IMG/VR virus record: IMGVR_UViG_3300023278_002893
Location: 186,001-250,000 of that record
Length of the DNA: 64,000 nucleotides
Direction: 5' to 3' (one strand)
A model generated the notes under the pieces. That model was not told the origin of the DNA. It saw nothing but the letters and a program-made list of their open reading frames with translations, and did no database searches. The translations under genes were made by a program, and so were the position numbers. Below, piece by piece: positions 1-15,344 of this stretch; position 1 is the stretch's first letter; each line of letters starts with the position of its first letter.

Positions 1-670
1 CAGAAGCTGACGGGACTCGCCGCTCTCGGGTGACTTGCGCCATCTTCTGAGCAACATCGCGTACCATAGATACACACTTTTCGTCTTTCGGATCACAACC
101 AAGGCTTTCTGCGATAGAAGCAACTTCCTTCTCATCGAGTTCTGCCTCGGTATCTTCTCCTGCTTCTTCGGAAGAGGATGCGTACTTAGTCTTAAGAGCC
201 ACAAGTTCACTCTTGTACGCTTCAAAAGATTCGTCATCAAAACTTCGAACCTTAGCATACTGACGCTCGGCCTCGTCACCCTCAAGGGCAACACCTGCGT
301 CTTCCAGGTCGGACATACGTCCGGCGGCAGTTTCCTCACGAGCGAGCGTCTCCAAAGCGGCCTCGGCCACCTCGGCTCGGCGAGATAGTGTTTCAATCTG
401 CGCCTCAAGTTCAACGGTTCTCTCATTAGCTGCAACCTCTGCCTCAGATGGGGCAGTGGTGTCCAGCTGCGCAAGAGCTTCCTCGTACTCGGCAATCTTA
501 GCGTCCTTCGCCTCAAGGGCCGCTCGTAGCTTCGCAAAAGTATCTCGTGCTTCAGTGAGAGCTTCCTCGGCTGCGGTTCGTGCGTGTGCCTCTTCGCGAG
601 AAGATAGCACCTCATCGACCTTAGCCTGGACAGCATTGTTGAACTCTTCAGGAGTCATTTCCTTTGTCAT
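1..670 (-). CDS. Acidic coiled-coil protein, probable capsid scaffold (runs off window edge; not in ORF track)
   Basis: Manual translation from ATG at 670 (RBS AAGGAGG): MTKEMTPEEFNNAVQAKVDEVLSSREEAHARTAAEEAL..., open to base 1; A/E-rich; downstream of portal and protease. Confidence 0.65.
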   Translation of the reverse strand, partial: MTKEMTPEEFNNAVQAKVDEVLSSREEAHARTAAEEALTEARDTFAKLRAALEAKDAKIAEYEEALAQLDTTAPSEAEVAANERTVELEAQIETLSRRAEVAEAALETLAREETAAGRMSDLEDAGVALEGDEAERQYAKVRSFDDESFEAYKSELVALKTKYASSSEEAGEDTEAELDEKEVASIAESLGCDPKDEKCVSMVRDVAQKMAQVTRERRVPSAS

Positions 671-926
671 GGTCGCTCTTCCTCCTTTAATAGAGTTTAT
701 ATTGGCTTTGAAGTTTCGTCCCCCAACGTAACTTGTTATCTGCCGTGGCGTGCGCTTTGTGTCACGCTTCCTCTCATCTACTCCGTATCCTATTCCTTGG
801 TTTTAATCCAGTAAACCAATTACTTAATACCTAATACCTAGTGTCTTCGAAGACAATCTAGAAACCGTGTCAAACACGGCCTTGTGGTAACAGAGGCGCA
901 CCCCTGTTACCGAATACTTGTGGTAA

Positions 927-1451
927 TTAACTAGGTAAATCCATTCCCAATAACTTAATAGAAATACTATCAGCGCTGGTTCCTGAAGAGAGAACTGTAG
1001 TAGTACTTCCAAACTTGAAACTGATCGATACAATATTGTTTGTTGCGTCAGTATAAGCCTGGTTAAGAATCAAAGTAGAATCTGCCACATTATTACCATC
1101 GGTTCCACAGGCCACAAACTGTCCCCTGTAGGTCTTTTTAGCACCCGCAGAGCCGACCGACTCAAGGCCACCCGAAAAGTCCACCGCACTACCATCAACA
1201 GGCAACTCCACACAATTAATACCATCAAAATCAGAGGTGCTGTCCATAAGTCTGTAATTAGATTTAGTGTCGTCTAGATTATACTGAGCGATGATAGAAC
1301 CTCTACCGGAACCCTCGGTTGCAATCTTCACTTCCTTACCCTTGACAACAAGTTTAAGCATGTCGTGGGCAGTGTATCCCGAAACCGTAACTTCGTTCGT
1401 CGAGGTCAAAGATCCCTCTGTACTAGCTAGAACTTCCCATTCTCCTACCAT
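927..1451 (-). CDS. Probable virion structural protein (beta-rich, S/T/G-rich)
   Basis: 174 aa, RBS AAGGAGG, in head module. Confidence 0.5.
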   Translation of the reverse strand: MVGEWEVLASTEGSLTSTNEVTVSGYTAHDMLKLVVKGKEVKIATEGSGRGSIIAQYNLDDTKSNYRLMDSTSDFDGINCVELPVDGSAVDFSGGLESVGSAGAKKTYRGQFVACGTDGNNVADSTLILNQAYTDATNNIVSISFKFGSTTTVLSSGTSADSISIKLLGMDLPS

Positions 1452-1596
1452 ACGTAATACCTCCTTTTAGTTTATTTTTTATTAAATAAACAAAGAAAGT
1501 AAAACGGCCCCTATAGGGTGGGGCCCGGCCCTAATAAATATTACGACGCTCATAACTTCAAAGTGTGGTTATTTGAACTATTTAATAACTAAATGG

Positions 1597-1797
1597 TTAA
1601 GGTAACAGAACCGCTATACCACTAGTAACCACATCTACATACACACCACCAACAGGTACACCACTCGCAGTAGCATCGAGAGGACCATTAGCAGTTAAAA
1701 GACCGTTAAATGCAAGTGCTAATCCAAGTTTACCATCATCTCGGTACAGCTGTCCCACAGGGGTTACTGTAACGTTCTGCTGATCTGGCTTTGCCAT
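1597..1797 (-). CDS. Small probable virion protein
   Basis: 66 aa, strong RBS, GVPVGGVY motif. Confidence 0.5.
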   Translation of the reverse strand: MAKPDQQNVTVTPVGQLYRDDGKLGLALAFNGLLTANGPLDATASGVPVGGVYVDVVTSGIAVLLP

Positions 1798-1809
1798 AAC
1801 CTTCCTCCT

Positions 1810-2145
1810 TTATTCAGACTTTCTTGTAAAAATCAGCTGATCTTTTGTTATTTTAAATTCACCAATACTCGCTACAGCCTTCGATAAGAAGACAATAGTA
1901 TCTTGCCTATTAAGAAGCTCAACGGCTTGCTCAACGGCACGTTCCCGATCATCGCCGGCATCCACTATAGTAGGGCCAGATCCGACGAGTAAAAGAAAAC
2001 CAGAAGCTTTCTTGCGGTCAGCCATAGGATTTAACTCGTGAGCTTTCCTAAATGCGTCTATTTTGTGTCTGAATCTTTCGACAGAGTTGTCGGAAATTAC
2101 GGAAGAAGCGTCAATTGACTGGCTGCTAATTACGAATTTTTTTTT
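1810..2145 (-). CDS. ORF probably expressed as a -1 frameshift extension of the prohead protease (track ORF 1810..2025)
   Basis: Frame is open from the A10 run (2137-2146) to 1810; ATG at 2025 lacks a clear RBS. Confidence 0.55.
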   Translation of the reverse strand, partial: KKKFVISSQSIDASSVISDNSVERFRHKIDAFRKAHELNPMADRKKASGFLLLVGSGPTIVDAGDDRERAVEQAVELLNRQDTIVFLSKAVASIGEFKITKDQLIFTRKSE

Positions 2146-3545
2146 TCAGTCTCAATCACAAAATCCCTAAGAGAGTTTCGGAGAGACTGCGCCTCGTCAT
2201 GAAGTCGAACAATTTGATCTTGTCGTTCCGTTAGGGGCTCTACCGATGCGTCTACTTTATTAGTAACTGCGGGCAGAACAAGATCAGTGGTAAAACTATT
2301 ACCCGGTGTATTAGACAAGAATTCACGTACGGTCTTAGTAAATGCACCAGTGTCATCGGGGTTATTGGTCATAGAGTTTTTCTGATTTCGAAGACACTCG
2401 GGAGCTTTGGCGGTAGCACCAATAACAGGGCAGTGCTCCTCGAACAGAGCACAATAATGCTCCTGAATGACAGCACCTTCGGATTGATCTAGTGCGTTGT
2501 ACTTGGTCAGTCTCTTCTTGAAACTTACACAGGTACCGTCAATATTGCTCCCCACATAACCTGGACCAGGAAGACCACCCCCACTCCAACGAGCGGCTAC
2601 TTCCTTATTAGGGCTAACCGTAAGTACTCTGCTGATTCCTCCGGTCTCCTCATCAAGCTCGAGATAAAGTTTAGGGGCATCTTCGTCCGTCTGAACTGTA
2701 GAAACCTCTACTAAATTATCTGCCATTTCGACCTCCTTGTCAACCTGGGTTTCCCCTGCGGTTTCAGAAAGTACTACTTTGTGTCCTCGGAGATTATCAA
2801 TCATTTCTAGATCCACAACCTGCTCTCCCTTCTCCATCTGCTCACGTCGAGCTGCTGTCTCCATGATGATAGAGTGGGGGTTTGCAGGATTCTTAACAAT
2901 ACCCATCCCACTAAAGGTAATATGTCGAAGAACCCGCGCGACCTGTCGGACACCCATCTCCCTATGACCCGCCATTACCTTTACAAAACCACCTACCAGC
3001 TCATCAGGATCATACCCCAACGCCTGGGCCTCGTCACGTGTGATGATAGTATTGCCGATCTTAATGTCGAAGTCTTTAAAGAAACACTCCATGCTAACCT
3101 TCCACGCGCCTGCAGAAATTTCCTCTGCATACTCGGGGAAGCGCATCTTGTGGATAACACCTGCTACTGCAATGTCCATATCCACACCATCCAGATCCTG
3201 GGAAGCTTTTTCATAATCTGCCATAACTACCAGAGGATCAAACTGGCTACCATCCTTATACATATAAGCACATTCATAGATATGGCCGATGACCTTATCT
3301 TCCTCATGCTCGATATCAATGGCTTTATGCACTACAGTGTTGTGTGCCTTCATCATCTCTGATGGCAAGAAATGTGCACCATTCTTGTTAGTCCCTGCCG
3401 AGACCAGACAAGAGCGCATATATTGAAGATCCTGCTGCTTTTCATCAGGAAAAGCGAGCACGGCAGCTTTCTCCATCGCAGCCTTCTCTACCTCCTGCTC
3501 CACCTCAATGGGTGCATATACTCTAATCTTATTCTCTTCGACCAT
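2130..3545 (-). CDS. Prohead (head maturation) protease-like protein
   Basis: NKNGAHF, IDIEH, WKVSMEC and FSGMGIVKNPA motifs typical of large-phage prohead proteases; between portal and scaffold. Confidence 0.7.
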   Translation of the reverse strand: MVEENKIRVYAPIEVEQEVEKAAMEKAAVLAFPDEKQQDLQYMRSCLVSAGTNKNGAHFLPSEMMKAHNTVVHKAIDIEHEEDKVIGHIYECAYMYKDGSQFDPLVVMADYEKASQDLDGVDMDIAVAGVIHKMRFPEYAEEISAGAWKVSMECFFKDFDIKIGNTIITRDEAQALGYDPDELVGGFVKVMAGHREMGVRQVARVLRHITFSGMGIVKNPANPHSIIMETAARREQMEKGEQVVDLEMIDNLRGHKVVLSETAGETQVDKEVEMADNLVEVSTVQTDEDAPKLYLELDEETGGISRVLTVSPNKEVAARWSGGGLPGPGYVGSNIDGTCVSFKKRLTKYNALDQSEGAVIQEHYCALFEEHCPVIGATAKAPECLRNQKNSMTNNPDDTGAFTKTVREFLSNTPGNSFTTDLVLPAVTNKVDASVEPLTERQDQIVRLHDEAQSLRNSLRDFVIETEKKNS

Positions 3546-3743
3546 TTATTGTCCTCCCAACTCGGCTTCAGCTATTGCCGTGGCGGTATTCTCTTCTGAG
3601 TTTTCTTCGTCCTCTTTGAGAACCTTGTAAAGCTCATCTAACTTTTCTAAAGTCTGCTCACTTCTACGCTTAGTCTTTTGCTTAATCTCTGCTACTGTGG
3701 CTTCCATTGATTCTAGGTTTTGCATCGGATTTCTATCCTCCAC
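3546..3743 (-). CDS. Small coiled-coil hypothetical protein
   Basis: 65 aa, abuts both neighbours. Confidence 0.5.
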   Translation of the reverse strand: MEDRNPMQNLESMEATVAEIKQKTKRRSEQTLEKLDELYKVLKEDEENSEENTATAIAEAELGGQ

Positions 3744-3986
3744 TTAGTCTGAATTCCGTTTAAAGACCTTTATCAAAAGATCTATTGAATCGTCCAGTTT
3801 GTGAGCGAGCTCTTCATAGCGTTCTTTGCTCTCGGTCACATCACTGATTCTCTCACGGTAGAGAGTTAGCAACTGATCTTGTAACTTATTTTTTTCTTGA
3901 TAAAGATAATAAATAACACTACATAGTCCGACTCCTATTAGAGCAAAAAGACCATGCGCCTTAAATATTTCATTTAAGAGATCCAT
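3744..3986 (-). CDS. Small membrane protein (N-terminal TM helix + coiled coil; holin-like)
   Basis: HGLFALIGVGLCSVIYYLY hydrophobic segment; RBS AGGAGG. Confidence 0.5.
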   Translation of the reverse strand: MDLLNEIFKAHGLFALIGVGLCSVIYYLYQEKNKLQDQLLTLYRERISDVTESKERYEELAHKLDDSIDLLIKVFKRNSD

Positions 3987-4004
3987 AAGACTTCTGCCCT
4001 CCTA

Positions 4005-4262
4005 TTATGCTTGTGATATTGGGGATTCCGGCGCGCAAAGGCCTAAGTTATTTAAAATAAATCCCTCAGGGCACTCAAGAGTGCCTACCGGTTCAGCCCC
4101 CTCCACATTAGTAATAGGGATACAAGAACCCGATTTCGGATCAAAGACTTCCTCAGGTCTACACTGCGGATGGAACTCCTGAGGATCAGTTATCTGACTT
4201 TTGTCAGACCATCCTCTTAGGATTTTCCCAAGTTGGCCGCGATGATCTGGCGAGCATGCCAC
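4005..4262 (-). CDS. Cys-repeat ORF, probable -1 frameshift extension of 4217..6559
   Basis: Two further repeats (CRPEEVFDPKSGSC, CPEGFILNNLGLC); lies in the -1 frame after G GGA AAA. Confidence 0.6.
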   Translation of the reverse strand: MACSPDHRGQLGKILRGWSDKSQITDPQEFHPQCRPEEVFDPKSGSCIPITNVEGAEPVGTLECPEGFILNNLGLCAPESPISQA

Positions 4263-6559
4263 AAAAGATGTTCCTGAGCATCAGCGACTGCCTGGTCTGC
4301 ATACCCATCTATCTTAGACGACCTGGCCAATGCATTTCGCAATCTTGCAACATCCACAGATGCGGTATCGTAAGAATCCTCTACATCTGGGGTATGGTGC
4401 ATTAGATTACGTCGAGTATGTCCGACTAGGGAAGGAGGAAAAGCCTCGTTGGGTAGGTCCTTAGCGGCTACCTTGGACTTCTCCTTGTTTCCTTCCTCTG
4501 TCTCGTTTAGAATAACATCAAGAGCAGAGATTATCTTAGCAAGAGACATGTTACCCACAGTGTCTCCTACCGAGGCAGTGTTTCCTGGATTTTGAGGGCT
4601 GGAACCAGCAGGGCGACTTTTGTCCATGCTGTCCAGTGGGCGACAAATTTTATTCTTAGCATCCCAAATAGTGTCCTTAGGACAATCACTGGGGAGATTA
4701 AGTTTGCCAGCTGGAGCATCAACCAGTCCTTCTCTGTTTCCTGGGTTGGCATCAGCACTCTCATCTTCCGACTTACCCTTAAACGCACCCTTACGAGGCA
4801 TGCACTTTTTGGTAACAGGGTTCACGAACTGTCCCTCAGGACAACCAGGACCTCCCTTGTTACCCGGACCAGACGTGGTAGTCTGAGCCTCGTCCTCGGC
4901 GGACTTGGCTTTCTTCTTTTTCTTATTGTCTTTCTTGTCGTCTTTCTTATCTCCGTCTTTGCCCTTTTTCTTATCCAACATCTTCTGGATGAAGGGAGGT
5001 ATGAATGCATCTTCCTCACTGGACTTCGTATTCTTACTGGAGTCTAGAGGATCACAATCTTGCTTATCCGCATTCCAGATAGTACCCTTAGGGCAATCCT
5101 GAGGCAGTCTAGCAGGTCTTCCCTCAGGCAAGGGAGTGATGTCTCTCTTAGCTGCTTTGCTAGTATCCATTTCGATGCACTTACGTGCACCGAAGTTGTA
5201 CATCTGGCCGGGAGGACACTGGAAATTAACAGGGTCTCTTCGACCCTCAGGCTGAACAGCCTGCTCTGTCTTGACAGCATCGTAAAATCCCTGCACCTTA
5301 GAGCAATTCTTAGACTCGGAACTCCATTCCATTCCAGGAGGGCAGGGTCCTTGATTTACCTCAGAAGACTGCTCCTTCTCATAGGAAGACATCCTCGCCG
5401 CAACAATCTCCTCACGAATAGGACGCATTAGGTCATTGATTACTTCAGCAAAATCTAAAGAAGTTTCAGCCTTAGCAAAATTATTGACCTCAATCTCACA
5501 TGCCTTGGCACGTGCTAGAATCTTTCGTCTAAGTGATGCCTTCTCTGAGGAGGAGAGACCCTTCGCCTGGTTGAATCTGGACATCGCGTTTCTAACACGA
5601 GCGCAGGTGTCTAACGGAAACTTCCTCTTTCCAGGAACACCGAACGCACTGTCAGGCAGAGCATTACGCTGAGCGGATTTAATGGGCGCTGCAGACTCAT
5701 TACCTACCAAACTAGGAGAATCAACTGCGGTCGGGTCGTCGCCATACTCATAAACTTCCTGAGGAAGTGCGTGTCCAAAGTGCTGGGACTTATATCCCTT
5801 ACCAGAAAACTCCTCAACTATATAACCAGCTACATCGTGAGAATGTACCTCGTCCCCATAACCCTCGACGGAAGTCTTACCATTACCAGACGCATCTAGT
5901 GTTACTAGATGGGTGTGGCCGTGAAGGGGATCGGGGGAAGTCATAGCAACCTTACCACTCAGATAACGTGCCAGCTCCTGCTTCTCATCCTCAGTAAGTG
6001 CTGCGGATGACATCAGGGTGTCCTTGTTTAGAGGGATACACTGCCTAAGCTTAAAATCAAAAAGCTGCTTAGGGGGGCACTGGAAATTAACAGTGTCTCG
6101 GCGGCCCTCAGGATCCATATTAACAATCTCCTGATGTCCCCCAGTTCCTGGAGCAGCTGCTTCTTCTACTACATACTCGTTAGCCTCAGTCATTGCAAAC
6201 TCATCGCTAGTCTCAGACTCTGCTTCTTCCAGAGTAACACATCGTCTCTGGATAAAAGAAAAAGTCGTGCCCGCTGAGCACGACTCCGGTTCATCCATAT
6301 CATCTGCGTCAATTGCGACCTCGGTCTGGGACAGAACCTCCACAGACGCGGTACCTCGCCACTCAGGGCCGTGATCAACATTCACACTTCGGCTCTCCAA
6401 CGTGTGATCAATGCTGCCCATGGGAAGACATCGACCACTTGCAGGATCCTTACGATGTCCTTCGGGACAGTCTTCGTTCAACTCAATAGCGAACTCTCTC
6501 ATCTCTGTAAGAAAATCTAAAGGATTATTTCCCTCGTTTGATTTATTATTGTCGGTCAT
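4217..6559 (-). CDS. Head-module protein with eight C-x12-C repeats, a His-rich motif and two DUF6582-like segments
   Basis: Repeats such as CPEGHRKDPASGRC and CPKGTIWNADKQDC; HGHTH...HSHDV; LPDSAF..RKFPL..VRNAMSRF and LPNEAF..LRNALAR. Confidence 0.75.
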   Translation of the reverse strand: MTDNNKSNEGNNPLDFLTEMREFAIELNEDCPEGHRKDPASGRCLPMGSIDHTLESRSVNVDHGPEWRGTASVEVLSQTEVAIDADDMDEPESCSAGTTFSFIQRRCVTLEEAESETSDEFAMTEANEYVVEEAAAPGTGGHQEIVNMDPEGRRDTVNFQCPPKQLFDFKLRQCIPLNKDTLMSSAALTEDEKQELARYLSGKVAMTSPDPLHGHTHLVTLDASGNGKTSVEGYGDEVHSHDVAGYIVEEFSGKGYKSQHFGHALPQEVYEYGDDPTAVDSPSLVGNESAAPIKSAQRNALPDSAFGVPGKRKFPLDTCARVRNAMSRFNQAKGLSSSEKASLRRKILARAKACEIEVNNFAKAETSLDFAEVINDLMRPIREEIVAARMSSYEKEQSSEVNQGPCPPGMEWSSESKNCSKVQGFYDAVKTEQAVQPEGRRDPVNFQCPPGQMYNFGARKCIEMDTSKAAKRDITPLPEGRPARLPQDCPKGTIWNADKQDCDPLDSSKNTKSSEEDAFIPPFIQKMLDKKKGKDGDKKDDKKDNKKKKKAKSAEDEAQTTTSGPGNKGGPGCPEGQFVNPVTKKCMPRKGAFKGKSEDESADANPGNREGLVDAPAGKLNLPSDCPKDTIWDAKNKICRPLDSMDKSRPAGSSPQNPGNTASVGDTVGNMSLAKIISALDVILNETEEGNKEKSKVAAKDLPNEAFPPSLVGHTRRNLMHHTPDVEDSYDTASVDVARLRNALARSSKIDGYADQAVADAQEHLLWHARQIIAANLGKS

Positions 6560-6576
6560 TTTCTAATGTCCTCCGT

Positions 6577-8454
6577 TTAACTAGATTTACTTGGCTTTGT
6601 TGGTTTTGTGTTTGGTTTTGTAGATTTAGCTCGGGGCTTACCCCGTCCCTTTCGAGGCCGACCCTCGCTCGGAGTTCCCGTAGGGGTTCTCTGAATGTTC
6701 TGAATATTCTTCTGCAGGGATTGGATCTGATCTTGCATGTTTTTCTGGAAATCTTTAAGATCATCTTCTGTAACTGTAGTAGGCTTACCCCCCGGAGTAC
6801 CATCGCTCGTAGGTGCAACAGCCCCGGGTGCAACCTTGGGGTTGTACGGAGATCCAATAATGCCCAGAACTCCTGCTTGAACTGCGGGCGACTCCTGGAG
6901 CATGTTAGCATACTCGTTAGAGAAGTCGAAACCAAGCTTCTCAATACCGGTTTCATAAGAAATGATTCTTCGATCAATCATACCCTGGATGACGCTCATT
7001 AACATAATCTCATCCTTCAGAGTGTTCTCATCGAACCTAACCTTGGGATAACGATCGAAGCCCATTGCAAGTGCAACCTCTTCGTATTCGTGATCTATCC
7101 AACGTGTAACCACACGCCGGGCGTAATTAATCTCCTCAGCAAATGCCTTAGTGGCTGCCTCTATTGCCTTTGCGTTACCTGAAACCTCACCATCAATAAG
7201 GGCCCTAGTGACTCCCATGGACTGGCTTAGATCATCATTGACTTGTTCGAATTTACTCTGTCCTAGAATATTGTCAATCTCGGGAAAGGTGATCTTCTCT
7301 ACCTCCAGGGTGTGGTTCCACACGACATCAAAACTCTTACTAGAAGTATCGAACAACTGAGCGATTGCTTCTAACTGGGACTGATCAGTAACCGGATGCT
7401 CATCATTACCAATAGTTATCTTAAGAATATAGTTTGTAATTCCATCCAAGGTGGAGAAATCTGCCTTCTTTAATTCTTCCTTGTAGCGAATATCATCCAA
7501 AGCCCTAGAAAGCTTAGGCTTGGGGTACCGCTCATAATCCTGACGTCGATAATCACACTTTCCTACCAACTCCGGTGGAAGCAGCACAGGTTTGTCCTTC
7601 TTTACCTGATCTTTAAGTTCTTTAGGTAGGCTGTTAAGAAAAGCCTTCTGCTCTTTAGTCAGCTTAGAAGTATTCTTAAGCATTTTTTTCAACTCTTTGA
7701 AAGCTTGAGGCTTAAGTAGAGTTTCTGTCTGGTTAAATAACAAAGGACCTTGGATAACTACTAATCTAGGATCTAGAATTGTGTATTGTAAGGGTATAAA
7801 AGCCTTAGACCATATTTTCTTAGCAGCGCCCCATTCCGTATGTGCTTGTAATTTCTGTAGATCAGAGGTAGTTGAGAACATATTAGCTTTGGCTACGCGC
7901 TTGATCGTCTTATCAAAATCTTCTGGCTTCAACTTAGGCGCAAACTTACCCGCAATCTTGAAGGTCCTTACAAGTCCTACTCTAAAGAAGTCAAAGAATA
8001 TCTTCTCAACAGTTTCATGGAATCCAATCTCCCTAGTCCATGTATCATAAAAAAGTTTAATGGCGGGATCATCTATATCATTCTTAAAGCCCTTCGCGGC
8101 AAAGTTGGTTAGTGTGTCAATGACGGTGCCGATGTGTCCTTGAGAATGATAGGTATTAATTGCTGTATCGTAAAGCTGCTCGGGTCGTGCCTGTGTTACT
8201 TGCGGCTTACCAATAAGTAGATCAACATCTACACGTCGAAGCCAATCTCGAGAAATATTACGACCGCCCGTCCAAAACTTCATAGGATGTGGGTCTCCGT
8301 CTTTTCCTGTAAGAAACGCTAACTCCTTAACACCCCTACCCTCGGGACCAACATCAATCTCCATGGAATGAGAACCATCACCATTATCCTCATAGGAGAG
8401 AACTTCAGCATTTTCTAGACCCGCATTAAGCTTCTCTTTAACATCGTCGGACAT
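6577..8454 (-). CDS. Portal protein
   Basis: 625 aa immediately downstream of TerL; low-complexity C-terminus with GRP; size and position typical. Confidence 0.75.
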   Translation of the reverse strand: MSDDVKEKLNAGLENAEVLSYEDNGDGSHSMEIDVGPEGRGVKELAFLTGKDGDPHPMKFWTGGRNISRDWLRRVDVDLLIGKPQVTQARPEQLYDTAINTYHSQGHIGTVIDTLTNFAAKGFKNDIDDPAIKLFYDTWTREIGFHETVEKIFFDFFRVGLVRTFKIAGKFAPKLKPEDFDKTIKRVAKANMFSTTSDLQKLQAHTEWGAAKKIWSKAFIPLQYTILDPRLVVIQGPLLFNQTETLLKPQAFKELKKMLKNTSKLTKEQKAFLNSLPKELKDQVKKDKPVLLPPELVGKCDYRRQDYERYPKPKLSRALDDIRYKEELKKADFSTLDGITNYILKITIGNDEHPVTDQSQLEAIAQLFDTSSKSFDVVWNHTLEVEKITFPEIDNILGQSKFEQVNDDLSQSMGVTRALIDGEVSGNAKAIEAATKAFAEEINYARRVVTRWIDHEYEEVALAMGFDRYPKVRFDENTLKDEIMLMSVIQGMIDRRIISYETGIEKLGFDFSNEYANMLQESPAVQAGVLGIIGSPYNPKVAPGAVAPTSDGTPGGKPTTVTEDDLKDFQKNMQDQIQSLQKNIQNIQRTPTGTPSEGRPRKGRGKPRAKSTKPNTKPTKPSKSS

Positions 8455-10299
8455 TTATCTCCCCTTCTTCTTCTTCGGCTTAGGTTTCAAAACTGCGGCT
8501 CCGCTTAGACGTACCTTCTTATCGTTCCCCGCCTCTGACATAACTCTTCTCTTGAAGGCATCGGGATCACGGGCTATTTCCATCTTATCCATTATAGCCT
8601 GAGGAATAACTCCTCCAAAAGCATCTTCCATCTCTAAGGATTCTTTATCGCGGCTTCGACCACGTACCACCCCTCCGTGGTGCATGATGTCCTCTGGCAT
8701 ATCCTCTGTCCAGATCAAATCATAAATACAACGAGCTGCTAGAAAAAAAGCGGTGTAAAGATCCTTCTTCTGCTTCCCGTGACCTCCACCTTTAGGAACA
8801 TCGAAATGCTGTTTTCCAGTAGGAGTCTCAGTAAGCTCGATAGATTGCATCTGGTTCTTCATATCCCTAATCGTGTGCCAAGAGTCCTCTTCAGGAATGG
8901 TACCGTCCGTTAATGCTTTCAGTTTTTCACTCTGGGGAACCGATGGGAATAGAATGTCTCGATGCTCTAGTAACCGTAAAGCGTCGTAATTAGATTCCGC
9001 AATGAACTCAGCAGAAAAATTGCACATCGTTAGCATATCACGACCTGCTTTTAACTGGTGAACCTCATCCTCGGGATCAAGTATGGGACCTGCTGTATGG
9101 TTGGTGGGATTCTCTGCAAGAATGTCTTTGATGGCGAGGCCGCCACCCTGGGAATCCATATAGATATGGGTAACATTGAATGCTGAGCAAAGGTCTTCGA
9201 TGGTTTGGGCCATCTTGGGAAAGGGTTGATTATGAATTTCTAATGCGTGAACGACTTTAGCGGGCTGTCCAATCTCTACAACCGCAATGGCAAAAGAGTC
9301 TTCACTTCTAGCAGGATCTATACCTAAACAATAAGACTTACCGGGAGATCCCGCAACCTGAGTTGAGAAAGATTTACTACTACATGCTTCCAACAGCGAC
9401 GCTCTGTAAAAAGCATCTGTGTCGGGAATAAAAGCAGCCTCGTATTCCATCCGGAACTCAAGGCTAGACATTTCTTTTCTTGCGGACTCAACGTTATCTT
9501 TATCGAGGAATCCGGTCTCTAGTAATTTATACGGAACTCTAAAAGCTGCGTACTTAGGATTACCTGCACGCATCTCATCACGGTAGATCTTGTACAGATC
9601 ATACATGTGATTAAAAGTGAAATAACCAGATGATGTAATTATAATTTGGTTGGCGCTGCTGTCAGCGTCCAGCTCCTCTTGGGTGATCAACCCACGCTTA
9701 AGAAGCTCCTTCTGCCTTTTGATCCTCTCTACATTCTCCATAGGATTGGCTACGGTAGCTGCCATAGGACGAATGACCATGTTAAAAATCTCGGGTGGAA
9801 TGTGGGGAAACTCATCACAAACAATAGTAAAGAAACGTGAACCACGAATCTTAGTACCGTCGCCTAGAGGTATCGCTTGTATTAACGACCCCGGCTTACC
9901 CGCCACTGACTTAAATCTAATATAACAATTGTCTGATTGCTGGGTAGGTTTCTTCTCACACGCAGCTCGTAGGATCGGAGACCCTTGATACAAGCGCGTG
10001 CACTCATCAAAAATAAACTTAGATTGACGAAAAGTGGGTGCAATTAATCCTATCTTGTGTCCTGGATACAACATCCCTTTCAGTACAGCAAGCACAGCTT
10101 GGAGAAATGTTTTACCTGAACCACGACACATAATGGCGATGACGTTGCTCTTAGACCACATAGAGCGCAAGACTACTTTTTGGATTTTTGAAAGCTTGAG
10201 TCCCAATAGGTCTTCTGCTGCCATCTCGGGATATTCTCTATAGAACTCAATCAGCTCTGCTGCAGCTGATCTTAATTCCGGATCATCTTCGTTTAGCAT
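8455..10299 (-). CDS. terL: Terminase large subunit
   Basis: Walker A CRGSGKT, IRGSR, Walker B IVCDE, coupling ITSSG, nuclease LGIDPA and KKDLY. Confidence 0.93.
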   Translation of the reverse strand: MLNEDDPELRSAAAELIEFYREYPEMAAEDLLGLKLSKIQKVVLRSMWSKSNVIAIMCRGSGKTFLQAVLAVLKGMLYPGHKIGLIAPTFRQSKFIFDECTRLYQGSPILRAACEKKPTQQSDNCYIRFKSVAGKPGSLIQAIPLGDGTKIRGSRFFTIVCDEFPHIPPEIFNMVIRPMAATVANPMENVERIKRQKELLKRGLITQEELDADSSANQIIITSSGYFTFNHMYDLYKIYRDEMRAGNPKYAAFRVPYKLLETGFLDKDNVESARKEMSSLEFRMEYEAAFIPDTDAFYRASLLEACSSKSFSTQVAGSPGKSYCLGIDPARSEDSFAIAVVEIGQPAKVVHALEIHNQPFPKMAQTIEDLCSAFNVTHIYMDSQGGGLAIKDILAENPTNHTAGPILDPEDEVHQLKAGRDMLTMCNFSAEFIAESNYDALRLLEHRDILFPSVPQSEKLKALTDGTIPEEDSWHTIRDMKNQMQSIELTETPTGKQHFDVPKGGGHGKQKKDLYTAFFLAARCIYDLIWTEDMPEDIMHHGGVVRGRSRDKESLEMEDAFGGVIPQAIMDKMEIARDPDAFKRRVMSEAGNDKKVRLSGAAVLKPKPKKKKGR

Positions 10300-10973
10300 T
10301 AGTACCCGTCATCTTCCAGAACTTTATTTAGTTGCGCGGCGGTGTCATCCACCTCAGAAAGTAGTGACTGAACCCTGGCTTGCTGCTCACTCTTCTGCTG
10401 ACGGTCGAACTGAACTACCAAATCAACGATGTTAACGTCTGAGTTGATTTTAGAATCTTTACGATCTACTCTCCGGCTGGACAGATTCTCTTTAGATATT
10501 TGCTTACGTTTCCAAATCTTCTCTAGCGATTGCGATACTGCAATATGTGCCTGAGGGTCATTCTTTGTAGCCTGAAGCAATCTCATTTCCATTACGTCGC
10601 TTTTGGCTATTTCGAAGATATCATCCACATCGGCTGCGGTGGGCTCCTCGTTCTTGAAATCTGTCAGATAACTTACGACTATTCCTGTGAATCTCTTCTT
10701 CTCGGCAGGAGTGAAGACACCCCTCTGTGGAACAAGTCTCTTGATTAGATCGGGACTTAATTTGCGGCCCGCCGTAATTTCCTGCGCCTGGGCCTGATCC
10801 TCACCTTCCTCACCTAGGAGTTCGGGAACTAGAGGACCATCCTTTTGATACTGCTTTAGATTACTCCGGCTGTTAGCATTATTATAATTCTTACTGCCAG
10901 GATCTTTTTCTGCCTTTTTATCTAAATCTTTTTCGTCAATTTTAGGTTTCTTTGTCATAGGTTTGTCCGGCAC
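10299..10973 (-). CDS. Probable terminase small subunit
   Basis: Helical 224 aa whose stop overlaps the TerL start; NSRSNL motif. Confidence 0.55.
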   Translation of the reverse strand: MPDKPMTKKPKIDEKDLDKKAEKDPGSKNYNNANSRSNLKQYQKDGPLVPELLGEEGEDQAQAQEITAGRKLSPDLIKRLVPQRGVFTPAEKKRFTGIVVSYLTDFKNEEPTAADVDDIFEIAKSDVMEMRLLQATKNDPQAHIAVSQSLEKIWKRKQISKENLSSRRVDRKDSKINSDVNIVDLVVQFDRQQKSEQQARVQSLLSEVDDTAAQLNKVLEDDGY

Positions 10974-11042
10974 AAACAGGTGTGAGAGGGAACTGTAGAC
11001 AGCTCGCCTCTCATCTAACTTACAATTTTTTTAATAGTTATT

Positions 11043-11540
11043 TCAACAAGGAGAGTGTCGGATTCGCTCTGTATGTCCTCTTTTCTCCAATTCCTTAATC
11101 AACTTATCCTTCTCTTCGGGAGAACGCTGAATTAATTTAGTTGTCTTTGCCTTGTAACGTAAAAGCGGAGAATTAAAATCTAAAACCTTAACATATTCTA
11201 TCACCGACTGTATACGTTTTATAACACCCTCAATGTCACTAAAGACAGCACCTGCGGAGACCCTTAGAACTAAAATACCCGCATCTTCCCACAAACGTCG
11301 ATCTCTATCCGAATCCCTACGCCTATTCACGGAAGATTTGTGCCAATTACCGTCTACCTCAACCGCTAGGTTTAGTTCTGGGGAATAAAAATCTAAAATC
11401 CAATTAAGTACAGGTTCCTGAGATCTAAACGAATAACCCTCTAAACCCCGGGATAAGATATTCCAAAGTTTAGCCTCGGGGGGAGTTAGATTTTCACGAT
11501 ATTTCGCTGCCATCTTTTCATTCCTACTAAAATATTTCAC
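11043..11540 (-). CDS. DUF559/Vsr-like PD-(D/E)XK endonuclease
   Basis: TPPEAKLW, FRSQEP, LDFY, VEVDG.WH, D..RD motifs. Confidence 0.85.
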   Translation of the reverse strand: MKYFSRNEKMAAKYRENLTPPEAKLWNILSRGLEGYSFRSQEPVLNWILDFYSPELNLAVEVDGNWHKSSVNRRRDSDRDRRLWEDAGILVLRVSAGAVFSDIEGVIKRIQSVIEYVKVLDFNSPLLRYKAKTTKLIQRSPEEKDKLIKELEKRGHTERIRHSPC

Positions 11541-11600
11541 TTATTCCCCCCTCCACGTCCTAGAGGTAAGTTAATTAAAACCATGTATTTTTCAATGTTA

Positions 11601-12089
11601 TCAATGGGATACAGCATTTTCAGCGGAGACGAATTTTTTCAAAAGGTGGACGCTGTCCAATAATTCTATTACTAGATCCTCCTGTGCGAAGATGGAGCTG
11701 CTGCTGTATTGGTATTTTATACACTCCTCGGGAACCGCTTCGATGGGTGTCGTCTCTATATATTTTCTAATATCCCGTAATTCCTTTTCGGACCTAACGT
11801 CCCGCATTGCTTGAAGTAATTTGACTTTATTCTTATCAAAAAATTCTTCAAAACCCGGATACTCCGATCTAATGGAAATAAAACGATCTAGACACTTCTG
11901 TTCCAATCCAAGAAGGCTTTCGGACAGTGCTGCGCGGTGTGCCACAGATTTGGATTTACCAGACATTGATTCACTAATTTTCTTTTTGGTACTGGGATCT
12001 TGTACCTGCCCCGTATGGGACACACTAATTTTATTTTTAGTTTCTTTAGAATGCTTGTAGCCGGGCTTACGCCCTTTAGCTCTAGTCAT
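11601..12089 (-). CDS. NUMOD3-motif DNA-binding protein (homing-endonuclease related)
   Basis: GYKHSKETKNKIS and TKKKISESMSGK repeats; start reassigned to ATG 12089. Confidence 0.65.
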   Translation of the reverse strand: MTRAKGRKPGYKHSKETKNKISVSHTGQVQDPSTKKKISESMSGKSKSVAHRAALSESLLGLEQKCLDRFISIRSEYPGFEEFFDKNKVKLLQAMRDVRSEKELRDIRKYIETTPIEAVPEECIKYQYSSSSIFAQEDLVIELLDSVHLLKKFVSAENAVSH

Positions 12090-12090
12090 T

Positions 12091-12624
12091 TTAGATATCC
12101 TGTACGACGGTATTTTGCAATTCACTCTTCCGCTCCACAAGGTCCTCCTTAAGGTCCTGATCCACCCCTTTACCCAAAAGCTGGGCACCTACTCGAACCT
12201 TGACCATTCCACCGCCGACGGATTTTACCTTCGCCTCAAAACCAGCGAAAGGCCCCTCGAGCAGAACTACAGTATCACCTTTCCTATACCTACTGGTCTT
12301 AATGTCCACAAGAAGTTTACCTTGGTTCTCTTCCATAATACGAATTTCATCCTCGGCAACGATACCGGGGTGATGGGTTGTTATCCAAGGACACTGACTC
12401 ATTTTATGAAAAACTTGATCAGGATTATCATATCTGACAAAGAGATACCCCTCATATAGGGGGCTATCCTTAACTCTAACCCCCCGCTTGGTCACGATCT
12501 CCTGCTTTATCTGGGGGTAAAAATACTTATCTATTTCGGGGACATTCTTCCGTATGTGCGCGATAACGTTCTCGTATCTGTTCCTCTTGATTGACCAGGA
12601 ATGCCATCGTTTTGCAGTATCCAT
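12091..12624 (-). CDS. nusG: NusG/RfaH-family transcription factor
   Basis: NGN motif PLYEGYLFV; KOW motif GDTVVLLEGPFAGFEAKV. Confidence 0.88.
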   Translation of the reverse strand: MDTAKRWHSWSIKRNRYENVIAHIRKNVPEIDKYFYPQIKQEIVTKRGVRVKDSPLYEGYLFVRYDNPDQVFHKMSQCPWITTHHPGIVAEDEIRIMEENQGKLLVDIKTSRYRKGDTVVLLEGPFAGFEAKVKSVGGGMVKVRVGAQLLGKGVDQDLKEDLVERKSELQNTVVQDI

Positions 12625-13203: not shown

Positions 13204-14052
13204 TTAAGTAACGTTCACAGAAATGGTTGAAATACCTTCCGGTGTCCTAAGATACTGAGAAGGGTCTATCTCCAGCTGGGGGTTGGTAGCAGACGTGGAT
13301 CCTAGACGTCCTATCCGTCCGTCCTGGGAACTAACACCCCCTCGAAACTGACCTTCGAAATCATTGATAGCATCATCAAGAATGACTCCTTGGGCGGAGG
13401 TTTCTAAATTGAAAACTCTCGCCTCTATAGACATGGATCCCAGAGCCTGATCGCTAGGAATATTATAAAGGAAAGTAAAGACAGTAGCCTTAGTAATCCC
13501 CTGCTCGCCTCGTGGGAGATTTCGGCGATCGACCGCGGTACCGCTCACGTACAAAGTACAGGACATAATCGACTGGAGGGCGGTAGCCTCCACTCTAATA
13601 GTTATTTGACTTCCACGAGAAACTGAAACCCCAGGAGCAGGTTCTAAAATTCTAGAAGTAGGAAATAGAGCTTGGAAATCAGAAGCAACCAGTTGTTCTC
13701 TTTCTAGAATCTGCGCCGCTTCAATTGCGGCGGCGTCAATAGATCGGGGCGGCGCTTCTGGTCTTAGATCTTTAATACTACCCACCCGAATAACTCGAAC
13801 AGGATTCAGAGGGTCTTGACCTTCAATGGGTACCAGACCCTTATATGATCTGAAGATATCACCTTTCTGGTCTGGACGCTCTTGCTCATTCCAATCTATT
13901 TCTCGTCCTCGAGGATTATCTCCAAGAGGGTAAGTAGGGCGTCTCTTAGTAAATTGATTACCTTCAGCCGTACCACGCTCTACATTATCTGCTGCGAAGC
14001 TGTGACCAAGCCCACGCCCGTCAGTATCGGTTTTATCTCTTCTCTCTACCAT
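13204..14052 (-). CDS. Ig-like (Big) domain protein, probably virion-associated
   Basis: ILEPAPGVSVSRGSQITIRVEA...LYVSG...MSIEARVF pattern. Confidence 0.55.
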   Translation of the reverse strand: MVERRDKTDTDGRGLGHSFAADNVERGTAEGNQFTKRRPTYPLGDNPRGREIDWNEQERPDQKGDIFRSYKGLVPIEGQDPLNPVRVIRVGSIKDLRPEAPPRSIDAAAIEAAQILEREQLVASDFQALFPTSRILEPAPGVSVSRGSQITIRVEATALQSIMSCTLYVSGTAVDRRNLPRGEQGITKATVFTFLYNIPSDQALGSMSIEARVFNLETSAQGVILDDAINDFEGQFRGGVSSQDGRIGRLGSTSATNPQLEIDPSQYLRTPEGISTISVNVT

Positions 14053-14761
14053 TAGACAACTCCTTAAGAACTTTTATAAATTCCGCATCAGTTTTTGTAT
14101 GTTTCTTTAAATTACAATTAGGACACGTTAAAACAATATTCTTAATAAAGTTATTCCCACCCCTACTCAGGGGTATTTTATGGTCTCTATGAAATCCTTG
14201 CGAAATATCAACTCTACAATAATAACACTCACCCTGCTGCTCAGAATAAATATTTACTATCTCTTGCTGGGTATACCTACCTTTCGCGTTTTTAATAAGT
14301 GCACGTCTGTTGGCGCAGTAGGTGGCTTGATATTCTTTAGTGTGCGATAACCCGTGTGTACGAGAACGTATTCCTGTCAGTTCAGCACCGTAGCAGCCGC
14401 AGCTCACAGAACTTCCATTTCTAAGTTTAGTACCCCGCACCACTCCCATATTACCACATTCACAAACACAGCGGTATGTTAGTTCATTACCTCTACCATC
14501 CCGACGCCTATTAACTATTTGTTCCTTAACTACCCATCGACCAAACTTAGTACCAAGTTTAATTTCTTTCCTGGCGGTTTCCACAACTAAGCAACCGCAA
14601 CTTGCAACGTTTCCTACCTTGAGATGGGAACTTTTGGCAGAGTGTAAATTACCGCAGTCACAAATACATTCCCATCTAATATGCTTACCGCCCCCTCCCG
14701 AAGTCAAAATCCTACTCAGCACAACGAGTCTCCCAAATCTTTTACCTTTCAGGTCATCCAC
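14033..14761 (-). CDS. HNH homing endonuclease with two N-terminal G.RFGRL.V/C.CDCG repeats
   Basis: CYYC...HRDHKIPLSRGG.N...N....CPNCN; start reassigned to GTG 14761. Confidence 0.85.
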   Translation of the reverse strand: MDDLKGKRFGRLVVLSRILTSGGGGKHIRWECICDCGNLHSAKSSHLKVGNVASCGCLVVETARKEIKLGTKFGRWVVKEQIVNRRRDGRGNELTYRCVCECGNMGVVRGTKLRNGSSVSCGCYGAELTGIRSRTHGLSHTKEYQATYCANRRALIKNAKGRYTQQEIVNIYSEQQGECYYCRVDISQGFHRDHKIPLSRGGNNFIKNIVLTCPNCNLKKHTKTDAEFIKVLKELSNGREKR

Positions 14762-15344
14762 TAATTTCAGACCCCCTCTCATCCAATCTTTGCCATCCAA
14801 TTTCCTCCGCAAGATCGCAAACGCTGAGAAAAAACTCATCCAAAGTACCGTTGTTCTCGATGATCTTGTAGTAGTCTGTGTAGTCCTGCATCGATGTCTC
14901 ACTAGAATGATTGACGCCGACAGTAACCCCACTTCCTTCCCGGGTCACCTTGACTACAACACCACCTACTTTTTTTATTTTTTCTGCTTCGTTCGGATAA
15001 CGCACATCTGAAATAACAAACCTACTAAAACCCTGCGCTCTAAGTCGAGGGATAGTAATATTAAGAACCGTATCAATCCAAATGTCAGGATAAATCTCCC
15101 GCATCTTCTCACCCAATCCCTGCATAATCTCTCGAGGTGTAAGATTGTATCTGGGATCCACTTTCTCTTTGACGGAAACAGGACCGTAACACTGCTCGTA
15201 CGAAAGTCCAAAAAGACTACTTGCTGTACTTTTTAGAGCATCGGCAAACGCTACCCTTTTAACCCCAGGACGTTCTTCCAGGTACTCTGCCGCCGTATCT
15301 TTACCCACCTGGGCAGTAACTCCTAATCCTAAAATATCAATCAT
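14754..15344 (-). CDS. Deoxynucleoside monophosphate kinase (T4 gp1-like)
   Basis: GKDTAA P-loop, FADALK, PREIMQ.LG, ISDVRYPNE, HSSE. Confidence 0.88.
   Translation of the reverse strand: MIDILGLGVTAQVGKDTAAEYLEERPGVKRVAFADALKSTASSLFGLSYEQCYGPVSVKEKVDPRYNLTPREIMQGLGEKMREIYPDIWIDTVLNITIPRLRAQGFSRFVISDVRYPNEAEKIKKVGGVVVKVTREGSGVTVGVNHSSETSMQDYTDYYKIIENNGTLDEFFLSVCDLAEEIGWQRLDERGSEISG

What the first reader, a model, noticed from the sequence alone, without database searches (positions are those of the whole stretch)
4217..6559. Unusual Cys-repeat protein between portal and prohead protease
Seen: eight C-x12-C units (mostly CP-x-G), spaced by acidic or disordered linkers, two with PEGRRD.VNFQCPP; also a His cluster and two DUF6582-like segments. 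The unit resembles the C-terminal half of chitin-binding type-2 (peritrophin) modules. Inference: a disulfide- or metal-stapled, protease-processed head protein, possibly a glycan-binding decoration or internal core protein.
Basis: partly seen in the sequence, partly recalled or inferred. Interest (0 to 1): 0.6.

Follow-up and report, generated by a model that had tools for sequence, protein, structure and literature searches.

The report
Frameshifted Cys-hairpin head protein of huge phages

Summary
The gene lies on the minus strand (window 4217-6559, 780 aa). It has eight exact C-x12-C units; about 0.4 are expected by chance. All 16 unit cysteines are invariant in 70 homologues. Each unit matches only the C-terminal hairpin of the chitin-binding CBM14 domain, so this is not a CBM14 domain, and the tryptophan CBM14 needs for chitin binding is replaced by proline.

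New here: a slippery heptamer (G_GGA_AAA, or A_AAA_AAA in relatives) sits 2-3 codons before the stop in 23 of 23 loci. The -1 frame then stays open for 71-292 codons, usually without any start codon. It encodes two more hairpins. In relatives it also encodes a Dps/ferritin domain or a small Cys-containing module.

The neighbouring 471-aa gene carries a second conserved -1 recoding site.

The non-hairpin modules (a five-His domain, DUF6582, a C-terminal helical module) recur in other phages. There they occur in genes between portal and capsid, fused to prohead proteases, a DNA methyltransferase or a DNA ligase.

Best reading: a prohead-internal scaffold/cargo-carrier protein made in two frameshift-set isoforms. 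What the hairpins do chemically is unresolved. The "prohead protease" neighbour is unverified.

The parts
4217..6559 (-). Zero-frame ORF (P0001, 780 aa): Cys-hairpin repeat head-module protein
   Evidence: About 100 homologues, all metagenomic, on contigs up to 320 kb.
6428..6469 (-). Hairpin unit 1 (C31-C44)
   Evidence: Predicted beta-hairpin. Cys invariant.
6239..6280 (-). Hairpin unit 2 (C94-C107)
6038..6079 (-). Hairpin unit 3 (C161-C174), preceded by PEGRRDTVNF
   Evidence: CBM_14 partial hit.
5765..5962 (-). Five-His beta module (residues about 200-265; DGHxH...GNGxT...HxHxV...Y.S.H)
   Evidence: pLDDT 84-89. The same module occurs in unrelated phage proteins.
5444..5695 (-). DUF6582 module (residues 289-372)
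   Evidence: Pfam 35 bits. hhalign 99.4% to DUF6582 proteins of other phages.
5303..5344 (-). Hairpin unit 4 (C406-C419)
5177..5218 (-). Hairpin unit 5 (C448-C461), preceded by PEGRRDPVNF
5054..5095 (-). Hairpin unit 6 (C489-C502); best single CBM_14 match
4901..4972 (-). Lys/Asp-rich disordered linker (residues 530-553)
   Evidence: pLDDT below 50.
4802..4843 (-). Hairpin unit 7 (C573-C586)
4643..4684 (-). Hairpin unit 8 (C626-C639)
4220..4612 (-). C-terminal helical module (residues 650-780), weakly DUF6582-like
   Evidence: Found as a separate module in other phage head-module proteins.
4223..4229 (-). Slippery heptamer G_GGA_AAA, three codons before the zero-frame stop
4008..4229 (-). -1 frame extension. 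The trans-frame product is residues 1-779 plus 72 aa, 851 aa in all.
4122..4163 (-). Hairpin unit 9 (C-x12-C) in the -1 extension
4035..4073 (-). Hairpin unit 10 (C-x11-C here; x11-x13 in relatives) in the -1 extension
4143..4222 (-). Possible stimulatory RNA stem starting 5-6 nt after the heptamer (not established)
6577..8454 (-). Portal protein (context)
8455..10299 (-). Terminase large subunit (context)
2130..3545 (-). 471-aa conserved neighbour (P0106).
1813..2145 (-). Second recoding site: an A10 run (A_AAA_AAA at 2139-2145) and a conserved 107-aa -1 extension of P0106

Best explanation
Shown:
- The gene encodes a conserved protein of the head-morphogenesis module of a clade of uncultivated 200-320 kb phages.
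- The protein is beads on a string. Small two-stranded beta-hairpins, each pinned by a Cys pair 12 residues apart, are separated by acidic or Lys-rich disordered linkers. The hairpins are homologous in pattern to the C-terminal hairpin of CBM14.
- Three other modules are present: a five-His beta module, a DUF6582 helical module and a C-terminal helical module.
- Translation has two outcomes. Most ribosomes would stop at 4217 and give 780 aa. A fraction would slip -1 on G_GGA_AAA (A_AAA_AAA in relatives), three codons before the stop, and continue.
- The slipped product gains two more hairpins. In relatives it also gains a variable end: a Dps/ferritin domain in 2 of 22 loci, a small two-Cys 'KMERC...AICRS' module in 17 of 22, or nothing.

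Inferred:
- The His, DUF6582 and C-terminal modules are prohead-targeting or scaffold-type modules.
- The protein is therefore built into the prohead interior, next to the portal or shell.
- It serves as a core protein and cargo carrier, and the frameshift sets a fixed ratio of plain to cargo-bearing chains.
- The hairpins are most likely unfolded or reduced in the cytoplasm and stapled by intra-hairpin disulfides once oxidised.
- What the hairpins bind, if anything, is unknown.
For: Repeat: the repeat is real and conserved, and each unit is predicted as a hairpin.

Frameshift:
- An in-frame X_XXY_YYZ heptamer lies 2-3 codons before the stop in 23 of 23 loci at 35-100% identity. The -1 frame is open for 71-292 codons there, while the +1 frame is open for only 1-49.
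- In six loci the -1 frame opens only 3-4 codons before the stop. Fifteen of 22 loci have no ATG, GTG or TTG before the first extension hairpin.
- All 39 Lys codons inside the heptamers are AAA, although these genes use AAG for 81% of Lys.
- The extension is conserved as protein (tblastn 1e-28 to 1e-41). It carries CBM_14-like hairpins and, in L014 and L034, a Pfam Ferritin domain (E 1e-21 and 1.4e-18) that also matches the Dps-like phrog_3636 (3.5e-28).

Head context: TerL, portal and MCP flank the gene, and the gene order is conserved in relatives.

Module sharing:
- DUF6582 co-occurs with Peptidase_S78, XkdF, DUF2213 and ChaB in other phages.
- The His module is fused to a D12 adenine methyltransferase encoded directly after a Portal_Mu gene.
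- The His module also occurs in a gene directly after Phage_Mu_F.
- The C-terminal module is fused to an ATP-dependent DNA ligase encoded between a portal-sized gene and the MCP.
- The C-terminal module also occurs in a gene between a portal-sized gene and a lambda-E-type MCP.
- One homologue carries a ferritin domain inserted in the zero frame.

Precedent: head-packaged carrier proteins are described in PMC5512222.
Against: - There are no protein-level data. No trans-frame peptide, virion proteome or cultivated member exists.
- No sequencing run holding this DNA was listed.
- No conserved stimulatory RNA structure was found. RNAalifold gave nothing. Single-sequence z-scores range from +1.2 to -4.4, and a hand-drawn stem shows weak covariation only.
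- The interior location is inferred only from gene order and shared modules.
- Fold searches of the whole model found nothing.
- Disulfides do not normally form in bacterial cytoplasm, and no Erv-type oxidase is encoded.
- Many relatives come from marine sediment metagenomes. If those sediments are reducing, as I assume from general knowledge, stable disulfides are less likely there.
Confidence: 0.55

Rival explanations
1. The protein is an external capsid decoration or adhesin. The disulfide-stapled hairpins are displayed on the virion surface and bind glycans such as chitin, peptidoglycan or exopolysaccharide.
For: - The units match the CBM14 hairpin, including the G-x-x-aromatic-D/N pattern.
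- Disulfide-pinned mini-domains are typical of extracellular proteins (my own knowledge).
- Long flexible linkers would suit display.
Against: - Only a third of the CBM14 domain is present.
- The Trp two residues after the second Cys, required for chitin binding in CHIT1 (PMC4844120), is Pro in the units.
- The other modules are shared with prohead proteases and with enzymes encoded in the slot after the portal.
- The gene sits next to the portal, five or more genes away from the MCP.
Confidence: 0.15
2. The protein is a transient scaffolding or core protein. It organises assembly of the very large prohead and is then degraded and expelled, so neither hairpins nor cargo reach the next host.
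For: - The gene lies between portal and MCP, and the MCP seems to lack a delta domain (its family match starts at residue 12).
- The protein is acidic (pI 5.25).
- Four invariant x-E-G motifs lie 8-16 residues before hairpins 3, 5, 6 and 8. They could be maturation cleavage sites, because T4-type and phiKZ-type proteases cut after Glu (my own knowledge).
Against: - Fusions of the shared modules to Dps, a methyltransferase and a ligase make more sense if the protein stays with the DNA.
- The protein is mostly non-helical, unlike classical scaffolds.
Confidence: 0.2
3. There is no frameshift. The downstream reading frame (window 4005-4262) is an independent small gene that starts at GTG 4262 or at a non-canonical codon, or it is expressed by termination-reinitiation.
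For: - In the window a GTG lies 14 codons before the stop in the -1 frame.
- In this genome 7 of 509 ORFs have a terminal heptamer plus a long -1 ORF. That count includes this gene and P0106, and ordinary overlapping genes are expected to contribute.
Against: - Fifteen of 22 loci have no start codon before the first hairpin, and six open the -1 frame only at the heptamer.
- The GTG has no Shine-Dalgarno-like sequence upstream.
- The heptamer position and its AAA codons are conserved against strong AAG usage.
- The extension continues the same repeat as the zero frame.
Confidence: 0.07
4. The Cys pairs are metal ligands rather than disulfides. Two hairpins, from the same or different chains, together form Cys4 Zn or Fe-S sites. 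With the five-His module and the ferritin fusions, this would make the protein a metal-binding head component.
For: - The five-His module is conserved.
- Ferritin/Dps fusions recur.
- The number of units is even (10).
- Relatives occur in marine sediment metagenomes.
- The cytoplasm is reducing (my own knowledge).
Against: - In solved CBM14 domains the homologous C-x12-C pair is a disulfide.
- The model predicts isolated hairpins with no pairing between units.
- Cys 12 residues apart at the base of one hairpin is disulfide geometry (inference).
Confidence: 0.25

Closest known systems
CBM14 / peritrophin-A chitin-binding domain (PF01607)
   Same: The unit reproduces the C-terminal C-x12-C hairpin: CPxG, then an aromatic residue, then D/N, then the second Cys. 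It matches profile positions about 24-51 of 53. In CHIT1 that pair is the Cys450-Cys463 disulfide, which is also conserved in tachycitin and Der p 23.
   Different: - The N-terminal four Cys and the rest of the beta-sandwich are missing.
- The chitin-critical Trp after the second Cys is Pro.
- There is no signal peptide.
- The hairpin is repeated ten times on disordered linkers in a phage head-module protein.
MuF / SPP1 gp7-type head proteins and phage 'polyvalent' packaged proteins (PMC5512222, PMC5576092)
   Same: The gene is encoded right after the portal. The architecture is modular, with swappable enzymatic or cargo domains. Module-sharing proteins in other phages carry a Dam methyltransferase or a DNA ligase.
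   Different: There is no Phage_Mu_F domain. The targeting modules are different ones (five-His module, DUF6582, C-terminal helical module). The cargo is attached through a frameshift extension.
T7 gene 10A/10B and lambda G/GT -1 programmed frameshifts
   Same: An X_XXY_YYZ heptamer (G_GGA_AAA resembles lambda's G_GGA_AAG) lies close to the zero-frame stop. It yields a C-terminally extended minor isoform of a structural-module protein.
   Different: - The gene family is different.
- The extension carries repeat units and exchangeable cargo domains.
- A second recoding site sits in the next large gene.
- No stimulatory element has been established.
Prohead protease-scaffold fusions (Peptidase_S78, XkdF or DUF2213 with DUF6582)
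   Same: They share DUF6582 (hhalign 99.4%) and the genomic slot between portal and MCP.
   Different: No protease domain is detectable in this protein.
Encapsulin ferritin-like cargo loading
   Same: An HK97-fold shell system in which a ferritin-family domain is tethered to a shell-associated targeting segment. This applies to the relatives L014, L034 and P0069.
   Different: This is a phage capsid filled with DNA. The ferritin is Dps-like and is absent from the window's own phage. Interior loading is inferred, not shown.

Membership tests
CBM14 (PF01607) | Complete domain of about 53 positions with six conserved Cys (three disulfides) | tested here: not met
   Only profile positions about 24-51 match. 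No single stretch passes, and the 57.7-bit total is the sum of partial hits. Each unit has two Cys.
CBM14 (PF01607) | C-terminal C-x12-C disulfide hairpin with CPxG, an aromatic residue and D/N | tested here: met
   Eight exact x12 units plus one in the extension. CHIT1 Cys450-Cys463 has the same spacing.
CBM14 (PF01607) | Exposed Trp two residues after the last Cys (Trp465 in CHIT1), needed for chitin binding | tested here: not met
   That position is Pro in most units and in the family consensus (C-x-P-L-D).
CBM14 (PF01607) | Binds chitin | not testable with these tools
   Needs a binding assay.
DUF6582 (PF20223) | Score above Pfam's gathering cut-off | tested here: met
   32.5-35 bits against 27.3 for residues 302-359. 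hhalign 99.4%.
DUF6582 (PF20223) | A second copy at the C-terminus | tested here: inconclusive
   No Pfam hit. Pairwise E 2e-4 over 34 residues. hhalign probability 12%.
Programmed -1 ribosomal frameshift | In-frame X_XXY_YYZ heptamer at a conserved position | tested here: met
   23 of 23 loci, 2-3 codons before the stop. AAA is used in 39 of 39 heptamer Lys codons, against a 19% background.
Programmed -1 ribosomal frameshift | -1 ORF that overlaps the site, lacks its own start and is coding | tested here: met
   Fifteen of 22 loci have no start. Ferritin Pfam domain and conserved hairpins in the extension.
Programmed -1 ribosomal frameshift | Downstream stimulatory RNA structure | tested here: inconclusive
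   Stems are predicted 5-6 nt downstream in most loci, but z-scores are mixed, no RNAalifold consensus emerged and covariation is weak.
Programmed -1 ribosomal frameshift | Trans-frame protein observed | not testable with these tools
   No runs were listed and no proteome exists.
MuF / SPP1 gp7 head proteins | Phage_Mu_F domain (PF04233) | tested here: not met
   No Pfam hit.
MuF / SPP1 gp7 head proteins | Encoded directly after the portal, with variable cargo domains | tested here: met
   Cargo.
Prohead scaffold or core proteins | Present in proheads and acts in assembly | not testable with these tools
   Only gene order and shared modules are available.
Prohead protease (for the 471-aa neighbour) | Match to S77, S78 or a related family, or to the protease fold | tested here: inconclusive
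   - No Pfam, NCBIfam or PDB hit.
- PF03420 and PF04586 are absent from the genome.
- The fold prediction failed at pLDDT 36.
- Only a 21-residue '...SGMGIVKNPANP' resemblance to S78-type proteins was seen.

The most novel reading that the evidence does not exclude
This clade of huge phages uses programmed -1 frameshifting at the 3' ends of at least two adjacent head genes as a general device to load a fixed minority of chains with exchangeable cargo. One such cargo is a Dps/ferritin domain that would form an iron-storing, DNA-protecting cage inside the capsid, as in an encapsulin. The redox-switchable Cys hairpins would keep the carrier unfolded for packaging or ejection and rigid once oxidised.
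Probability: 0.2. Interest if true: 0.8.

Novelty: new variant of a known kind. Interest (0 to 1): 0.66.

Why it matters
Three things would follow if this holds.

1. It adds a well-supported new case of programmed frameshifting in phage head genes. There are two adjacent sites, conserved across a whole clade of huge phages. Automatic annotation currently misses them: it calls orphan small ORFs or leaves gaps.

2. It defines three unnamed or uncharacterised modules: the five-His module, DUF6582 and the C-terminal helical module. They mark genes between portal and capsid, and in other phages they carry proteases, a methyltransferase, a ligase or Dps. That gives DUF6582 a testable role as a prohead-targeting or scaffold module.

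3. The isolated CBM14-type hairpin repeated ten times is a new minimal repeat architecture. Its chemistry (disulfide or metal) in a cytoplasmically assembled particle is an open and testable question.

Tried and rejected
**Searches on the P0001 model and sequence**
- Fold searches of the whole model found nothing above noise: Foldseek PDB, BFVD, VIA wide (only generic helical hairpins, Z below 6) and ESM Atlas (TM below 0.2).
- The PDB profile search with the family alignment A1 gave no hit.
- Atlas feature searches gave nothing usable.
- megablast against known phages gave no match.
- A paper search for DUF6582 and PF20223 returned zero papers.

**The 471-aa neighbour (P0106)**
- Its fold prediction failed (pLDDT 35.8, Neff about 1.8).
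- The word search returned only close relatives.
- tblastn against known phages gave no match.

**Interaction and sequencing-run tests**
- Complex prediction of the MCP with P0001 residues 650-780 returned 'no answer', which is no evidence either way.
- The look-up of sequencing runs listed no run.

**RNA**
- Rfam found no family in window 1-12000.
- No tRNAs were found in the window.

**Genome-wide family searches**
- No Erv1/ALR sulfhydryl oxidase.
- No S77 or S78 protease.
- No ferritin in the window's own genome.
- One thioredoxin is present, but that is common in large phages and was not used as evidence.

**Ideas considered and dropped**
- The frame break is a homopolymer sequencing error. 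This was rejected because 23 independent assemblies share it, and seven of them have GGGAAAA, which contains only four A.
- An alternative genetic code. Nothing in the genome calls for one.
Full report
**Where it is**

The window is bases 186001-250000 of a 297,725-bp IMG/VR virus record that CheckV rates complete. The finding's coordinates match one ORF on the minus strand, 4217-6559, of 780 aa (P0001). Read in the direction of transcription, the neighbourhood runs as follows:
- terminase large subunit, 8455-10299 (phrog_2 at 1.7e-28, Terminase_6C)
- a 625-aa portal, 6577-8454 (tblastn to annotated portals of Basilisk/PBC4-type Bacillus phages, 3e-11)
- P0001
- three small ORFs of 85, 80 and 65 codons
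- a conserved 471-aa protein, P0106
- further small ORFs, then 293-aa and 168-aa proteins
- the HK97-fold major capsid protein, just outside the window (phrog_2522 at 1e-12; NF042927 at 8.6e-11)

This order is kept in relatives. No known phage matches at the DNA level.

**The observation**

There are eight exact C-x12-C units, which account for 16 of the 18 Cys. Random placement of 18 Cys gives a mean of 0.39 such pairs and never more than 5 in 200,000 trials.

The word search found about 100 homologues at 35-80% identity. All are metagenomic and lie on contigs of up to 320 kb, and some come from marine sediment metagenomes. They keep 7-9 units with exactly 12 intervening residues. In a 70-sequence alignment all 16 unit Cys are invariant.

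Units 3 and 5 share the PEGRRD.VNF lead-in. Units 6 and 8 share (L)P.DCP..TIW...K.C.PLDS. AlphaFold2 (mean pLDDT 61.6) models every unit as a two-stranded hairpin and the linkers as disordered. It models a confident beta module at residues 200-265 (pLDDT 84-89) and helical DUF6582 and C-terminal modules.

**Relation to CBM14**

Pfam gives CBM_14 57.7 bits for the whole protein. That score comes only from repeated partial matches to profile positions about 24-51 of 53. In the solved CBM14 domain of CHIT1, the C-terminal pair Cys450-Cys463 has the same x12 spacing. [quoted passage not shown]

The same paper shows that Trp465, two residues after the second Cys, is required for chitin binding. In the phage units that position is Pro. 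So the unit works like, and probably derives from, the CBM14 terminal hairpin, but the protein is not a member of CBM14.

**The frameshift (new)**

The 85-codon ORF after the stop (4005-4262) is in the -1 frame. It contains two further units, one C-x12-C and one C-x11-C, and has no ATG or TTG. The zero frame ends ...TTG GGA AAA TCC TAA, which contains the classical heptamer G_GGA_AAA.

I fetched 22 further loci that include the 3' end of the gene. The results were:
- Every locus has G_GGA_AAA (7 loci) or A_AAA_AAA (16 loci) in frame, 2-3 codons before the stop.
- The -1 frame is open for 71-292 codons, against 1-49 for the +1 frame.
- In six loci the -1 frame opens only 3-4 codons before the stop.
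- Fifteen of 22 loci have no ATG, GTG or TTG before the first extension hairpin.
- The heptamer Lys codons are AAA in 39 of 39 cases, although these genes encode Lys as AAG 81% of the time. The naive probability is 3e-29, overstated by shared ancestry but still decisive.

The extension is conserved as protein (tblastn 1e-28 to 1e-41). After the two hairpins it ends in an exchangeable part, tallied:
- nothing or a short tail (the window, L024)
- a basic tail (L013)
- a roughly 45-aa module with two invariant Cys, KMERC...AICRS (17 loci)
- a Ferritin-family domain (L014 at E 1e-21; L034 at 1.4e-18) that also matches the Dps-like phrog_3636 at 3.5e-28

A folded Pfam domain in a frame with no start codon is strong evidence that the frame is translated. 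In the window the trans-frame product would be residues 1-779 plus 72 residues, 851 aa with ten hairpins.

A stimulatory RNA is not established. Most loci fold into a stem starting 5-6 nt after the heptamer, but z-scores run from +1.2 to -4.4. RNAalifold finds no common structure. A hand-specified stem pairs in 74% of cells, against 30-54% for slid controls, with weak covariation. Rfam has nothing here.

**A second site**

P0106 ends with an A9-A10 run, with in-frame A_AAA_AAA four codons before the stop, in 20 of 20 loci. The -1 frame continues for 104-116 codons that are conserved from the very first codon. The first possible start codon lies 11-69 codons further on, at no fixed position. 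The window's 71-codon ORF 1810-2025 is the tail of this extension. With a run this long, transcriptional slippage is an alternative to ribosomal slippage.

**What the other modules say**

The exhaustive profile search of 1.84 billion representatives found only 15 proteins at E of 1e-30 or better, all belonging to the family itself. Everything else matches single modules, and nothing outside the family in the top 150 matches the hairpin regions.
- DUF6582: in 27 ORFs of unrelated IMG/VR phages it co-occurs with Peptidase_S78 (3), XkdF-type S78_2 (2), DUF2213 (3) and ChaB (3). It aligns to P0001 residues 289-372 at 99.4% probability.
- Five-His module: the pattern (PDP.DGHxH...GNGxT...HxHxV...Y.S.HPG) is conserved in unrelated proteins. 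One carries it ahead of a D12 adenine methyltransferase and is encoded directly after a Portal_Mu gene. Another is encoded directly after Phage_Mu_F, at the slot of Mu's protease-scaffold gene. A third lies in a module of TerL, a portal-sized gene and further genes.
- C-terminal module: it occurs behind an ATP-dependent DNA ligase domain in a gene between a portal-sized gene and the MCP. It also occurs in a 666-aa protein between a portal-sized gene and a lambda-E-type MCP.
- Ferritin: one close homologue has a ferritin domain inserted in the zero frame.

Together these place the modules in prohead-internal proteins, meaning protease-scaffold fusions and packaged enzymes. This is the logic described for MuF, gp7, DarB and the polyvalent proteins (PMC5512222).

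**Mechanism and its limits**

- Shown: the repeat, its conservation, the recoding signal, the coding nature of the extension, the head-module context and the module sharing.
- Inferred: interior location, a cargo-carrier role, ratio-setting by the frameshift and disulfide stapling.
- Unknown: the function of the hairpins, whether the protein is cleaved, and whether P0106 is the protease.

Four invariant x-E-G motifs precede hairpins 3, 5, 6 and 8 and are candidate cleavage sites. P0106 has invariant His and Ser residues and a '...SGMGIVKNPANP' strand that resembles S78 proteases by eye. However, it has no family hit, and its fold prediction failed.

The genome encodes no Erv-type thiol oxidase and no ferritin of its own.

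**Verdict**

This is a real, conserved and unusual protein. The most important feature, a conserved -1 frameshift that extends the repeat and attaches exchangeable cargo, with a second recoding site next door, was not in the finding.

Noticed in passing
window 1813-2145 (minus strand); loci L002-L037: There is a second conserved -1 recoding site at the 3' end of the 471-aa gene P0106. An A9-A10 run with in-frame A_AAA_AAA lies four codons before the stop in 20 of 20 loci. The 104-116-aa -1 extension is conserved from its first codon and has no conserved start. The annotated 71-codon ORF 1810-2025 is only its tail. Transcriptional slippage is not excluded.
   Followed up: partly
outside the window: G000:C1 178447-179939 (minus strand), followed by 176431-178311: A 217-aa ORF has G_GGA_AAG four codons before its stop. 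A 279-aa ORF follows in the -1 frame, then a 626-aa ORF. This looks like a lambda G/GT-type tail-chaperone frameshift upstream of a tape measure gene. No family hits were found for these proteins.
   Followed up: no
L014:6400-7281, L034:6583-7335, P0069 residues 504-643 (L003): A Dps/ferritin-family domain has been joined to this head protein in three homologues (at least two distinct arrangements): twice in the frameshift extension and once as an insertion in the zero frame. The window's own genome has no ferritin gene.
   Followed up: partly
window 5765-5962 (minus strand); P0240, P0252, P0254, P0300, P0324, P0338, P0362: An unnamed five-His module of about 80 aa (PDP.DGHxH...GNGxT...HxHxV...Y.S.HPG) is shared with head-module proteins of unrelated phages, one of them fused to a Dam-type methyltransferase. 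It is probably a metal site. No Pfam family covers it.
   Followed up: partly
window 2130-3545 (minus strand), P0106 residues 339-384: The C-terminal half of the 471-aa neighbour has four invariant Cys (C339, C365, C372, C384), so a second Cys-rich protein sits in the same head module.
   Followed up: no
window 11043-11540, 11601-12188, 14033-14932; G000:C1 183442-183954: There is a cluster of homing-endonuclease-like genes (DUF559/Vsr-like, NUMOD3, HNH, and EndoVII/HNH) around the terminase gene and just past the MCP gene.
   Followed up: no
window 927-1451 (minus strand): A 174-codon ORF sits between the P0106 extension and the 293-aa gene. It has no counterpart at this position in relatives L002 and L003, so it is a likely insertion.
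   Followed up: no
L012 (IMGVR_UViG_3300023278_003531, 196,567 bp): A 100% identical copy of the gene lies in a second IMG/VR record of a different length from the window's 297,725-bp record.
   Followed up: no
window 3744-3986 (minus strand), P0108: A conserved 80-aa protein with one predicted transmembrane helix is encoded inside the head module, between the frameshift extension and P0106.
   Followed up: no
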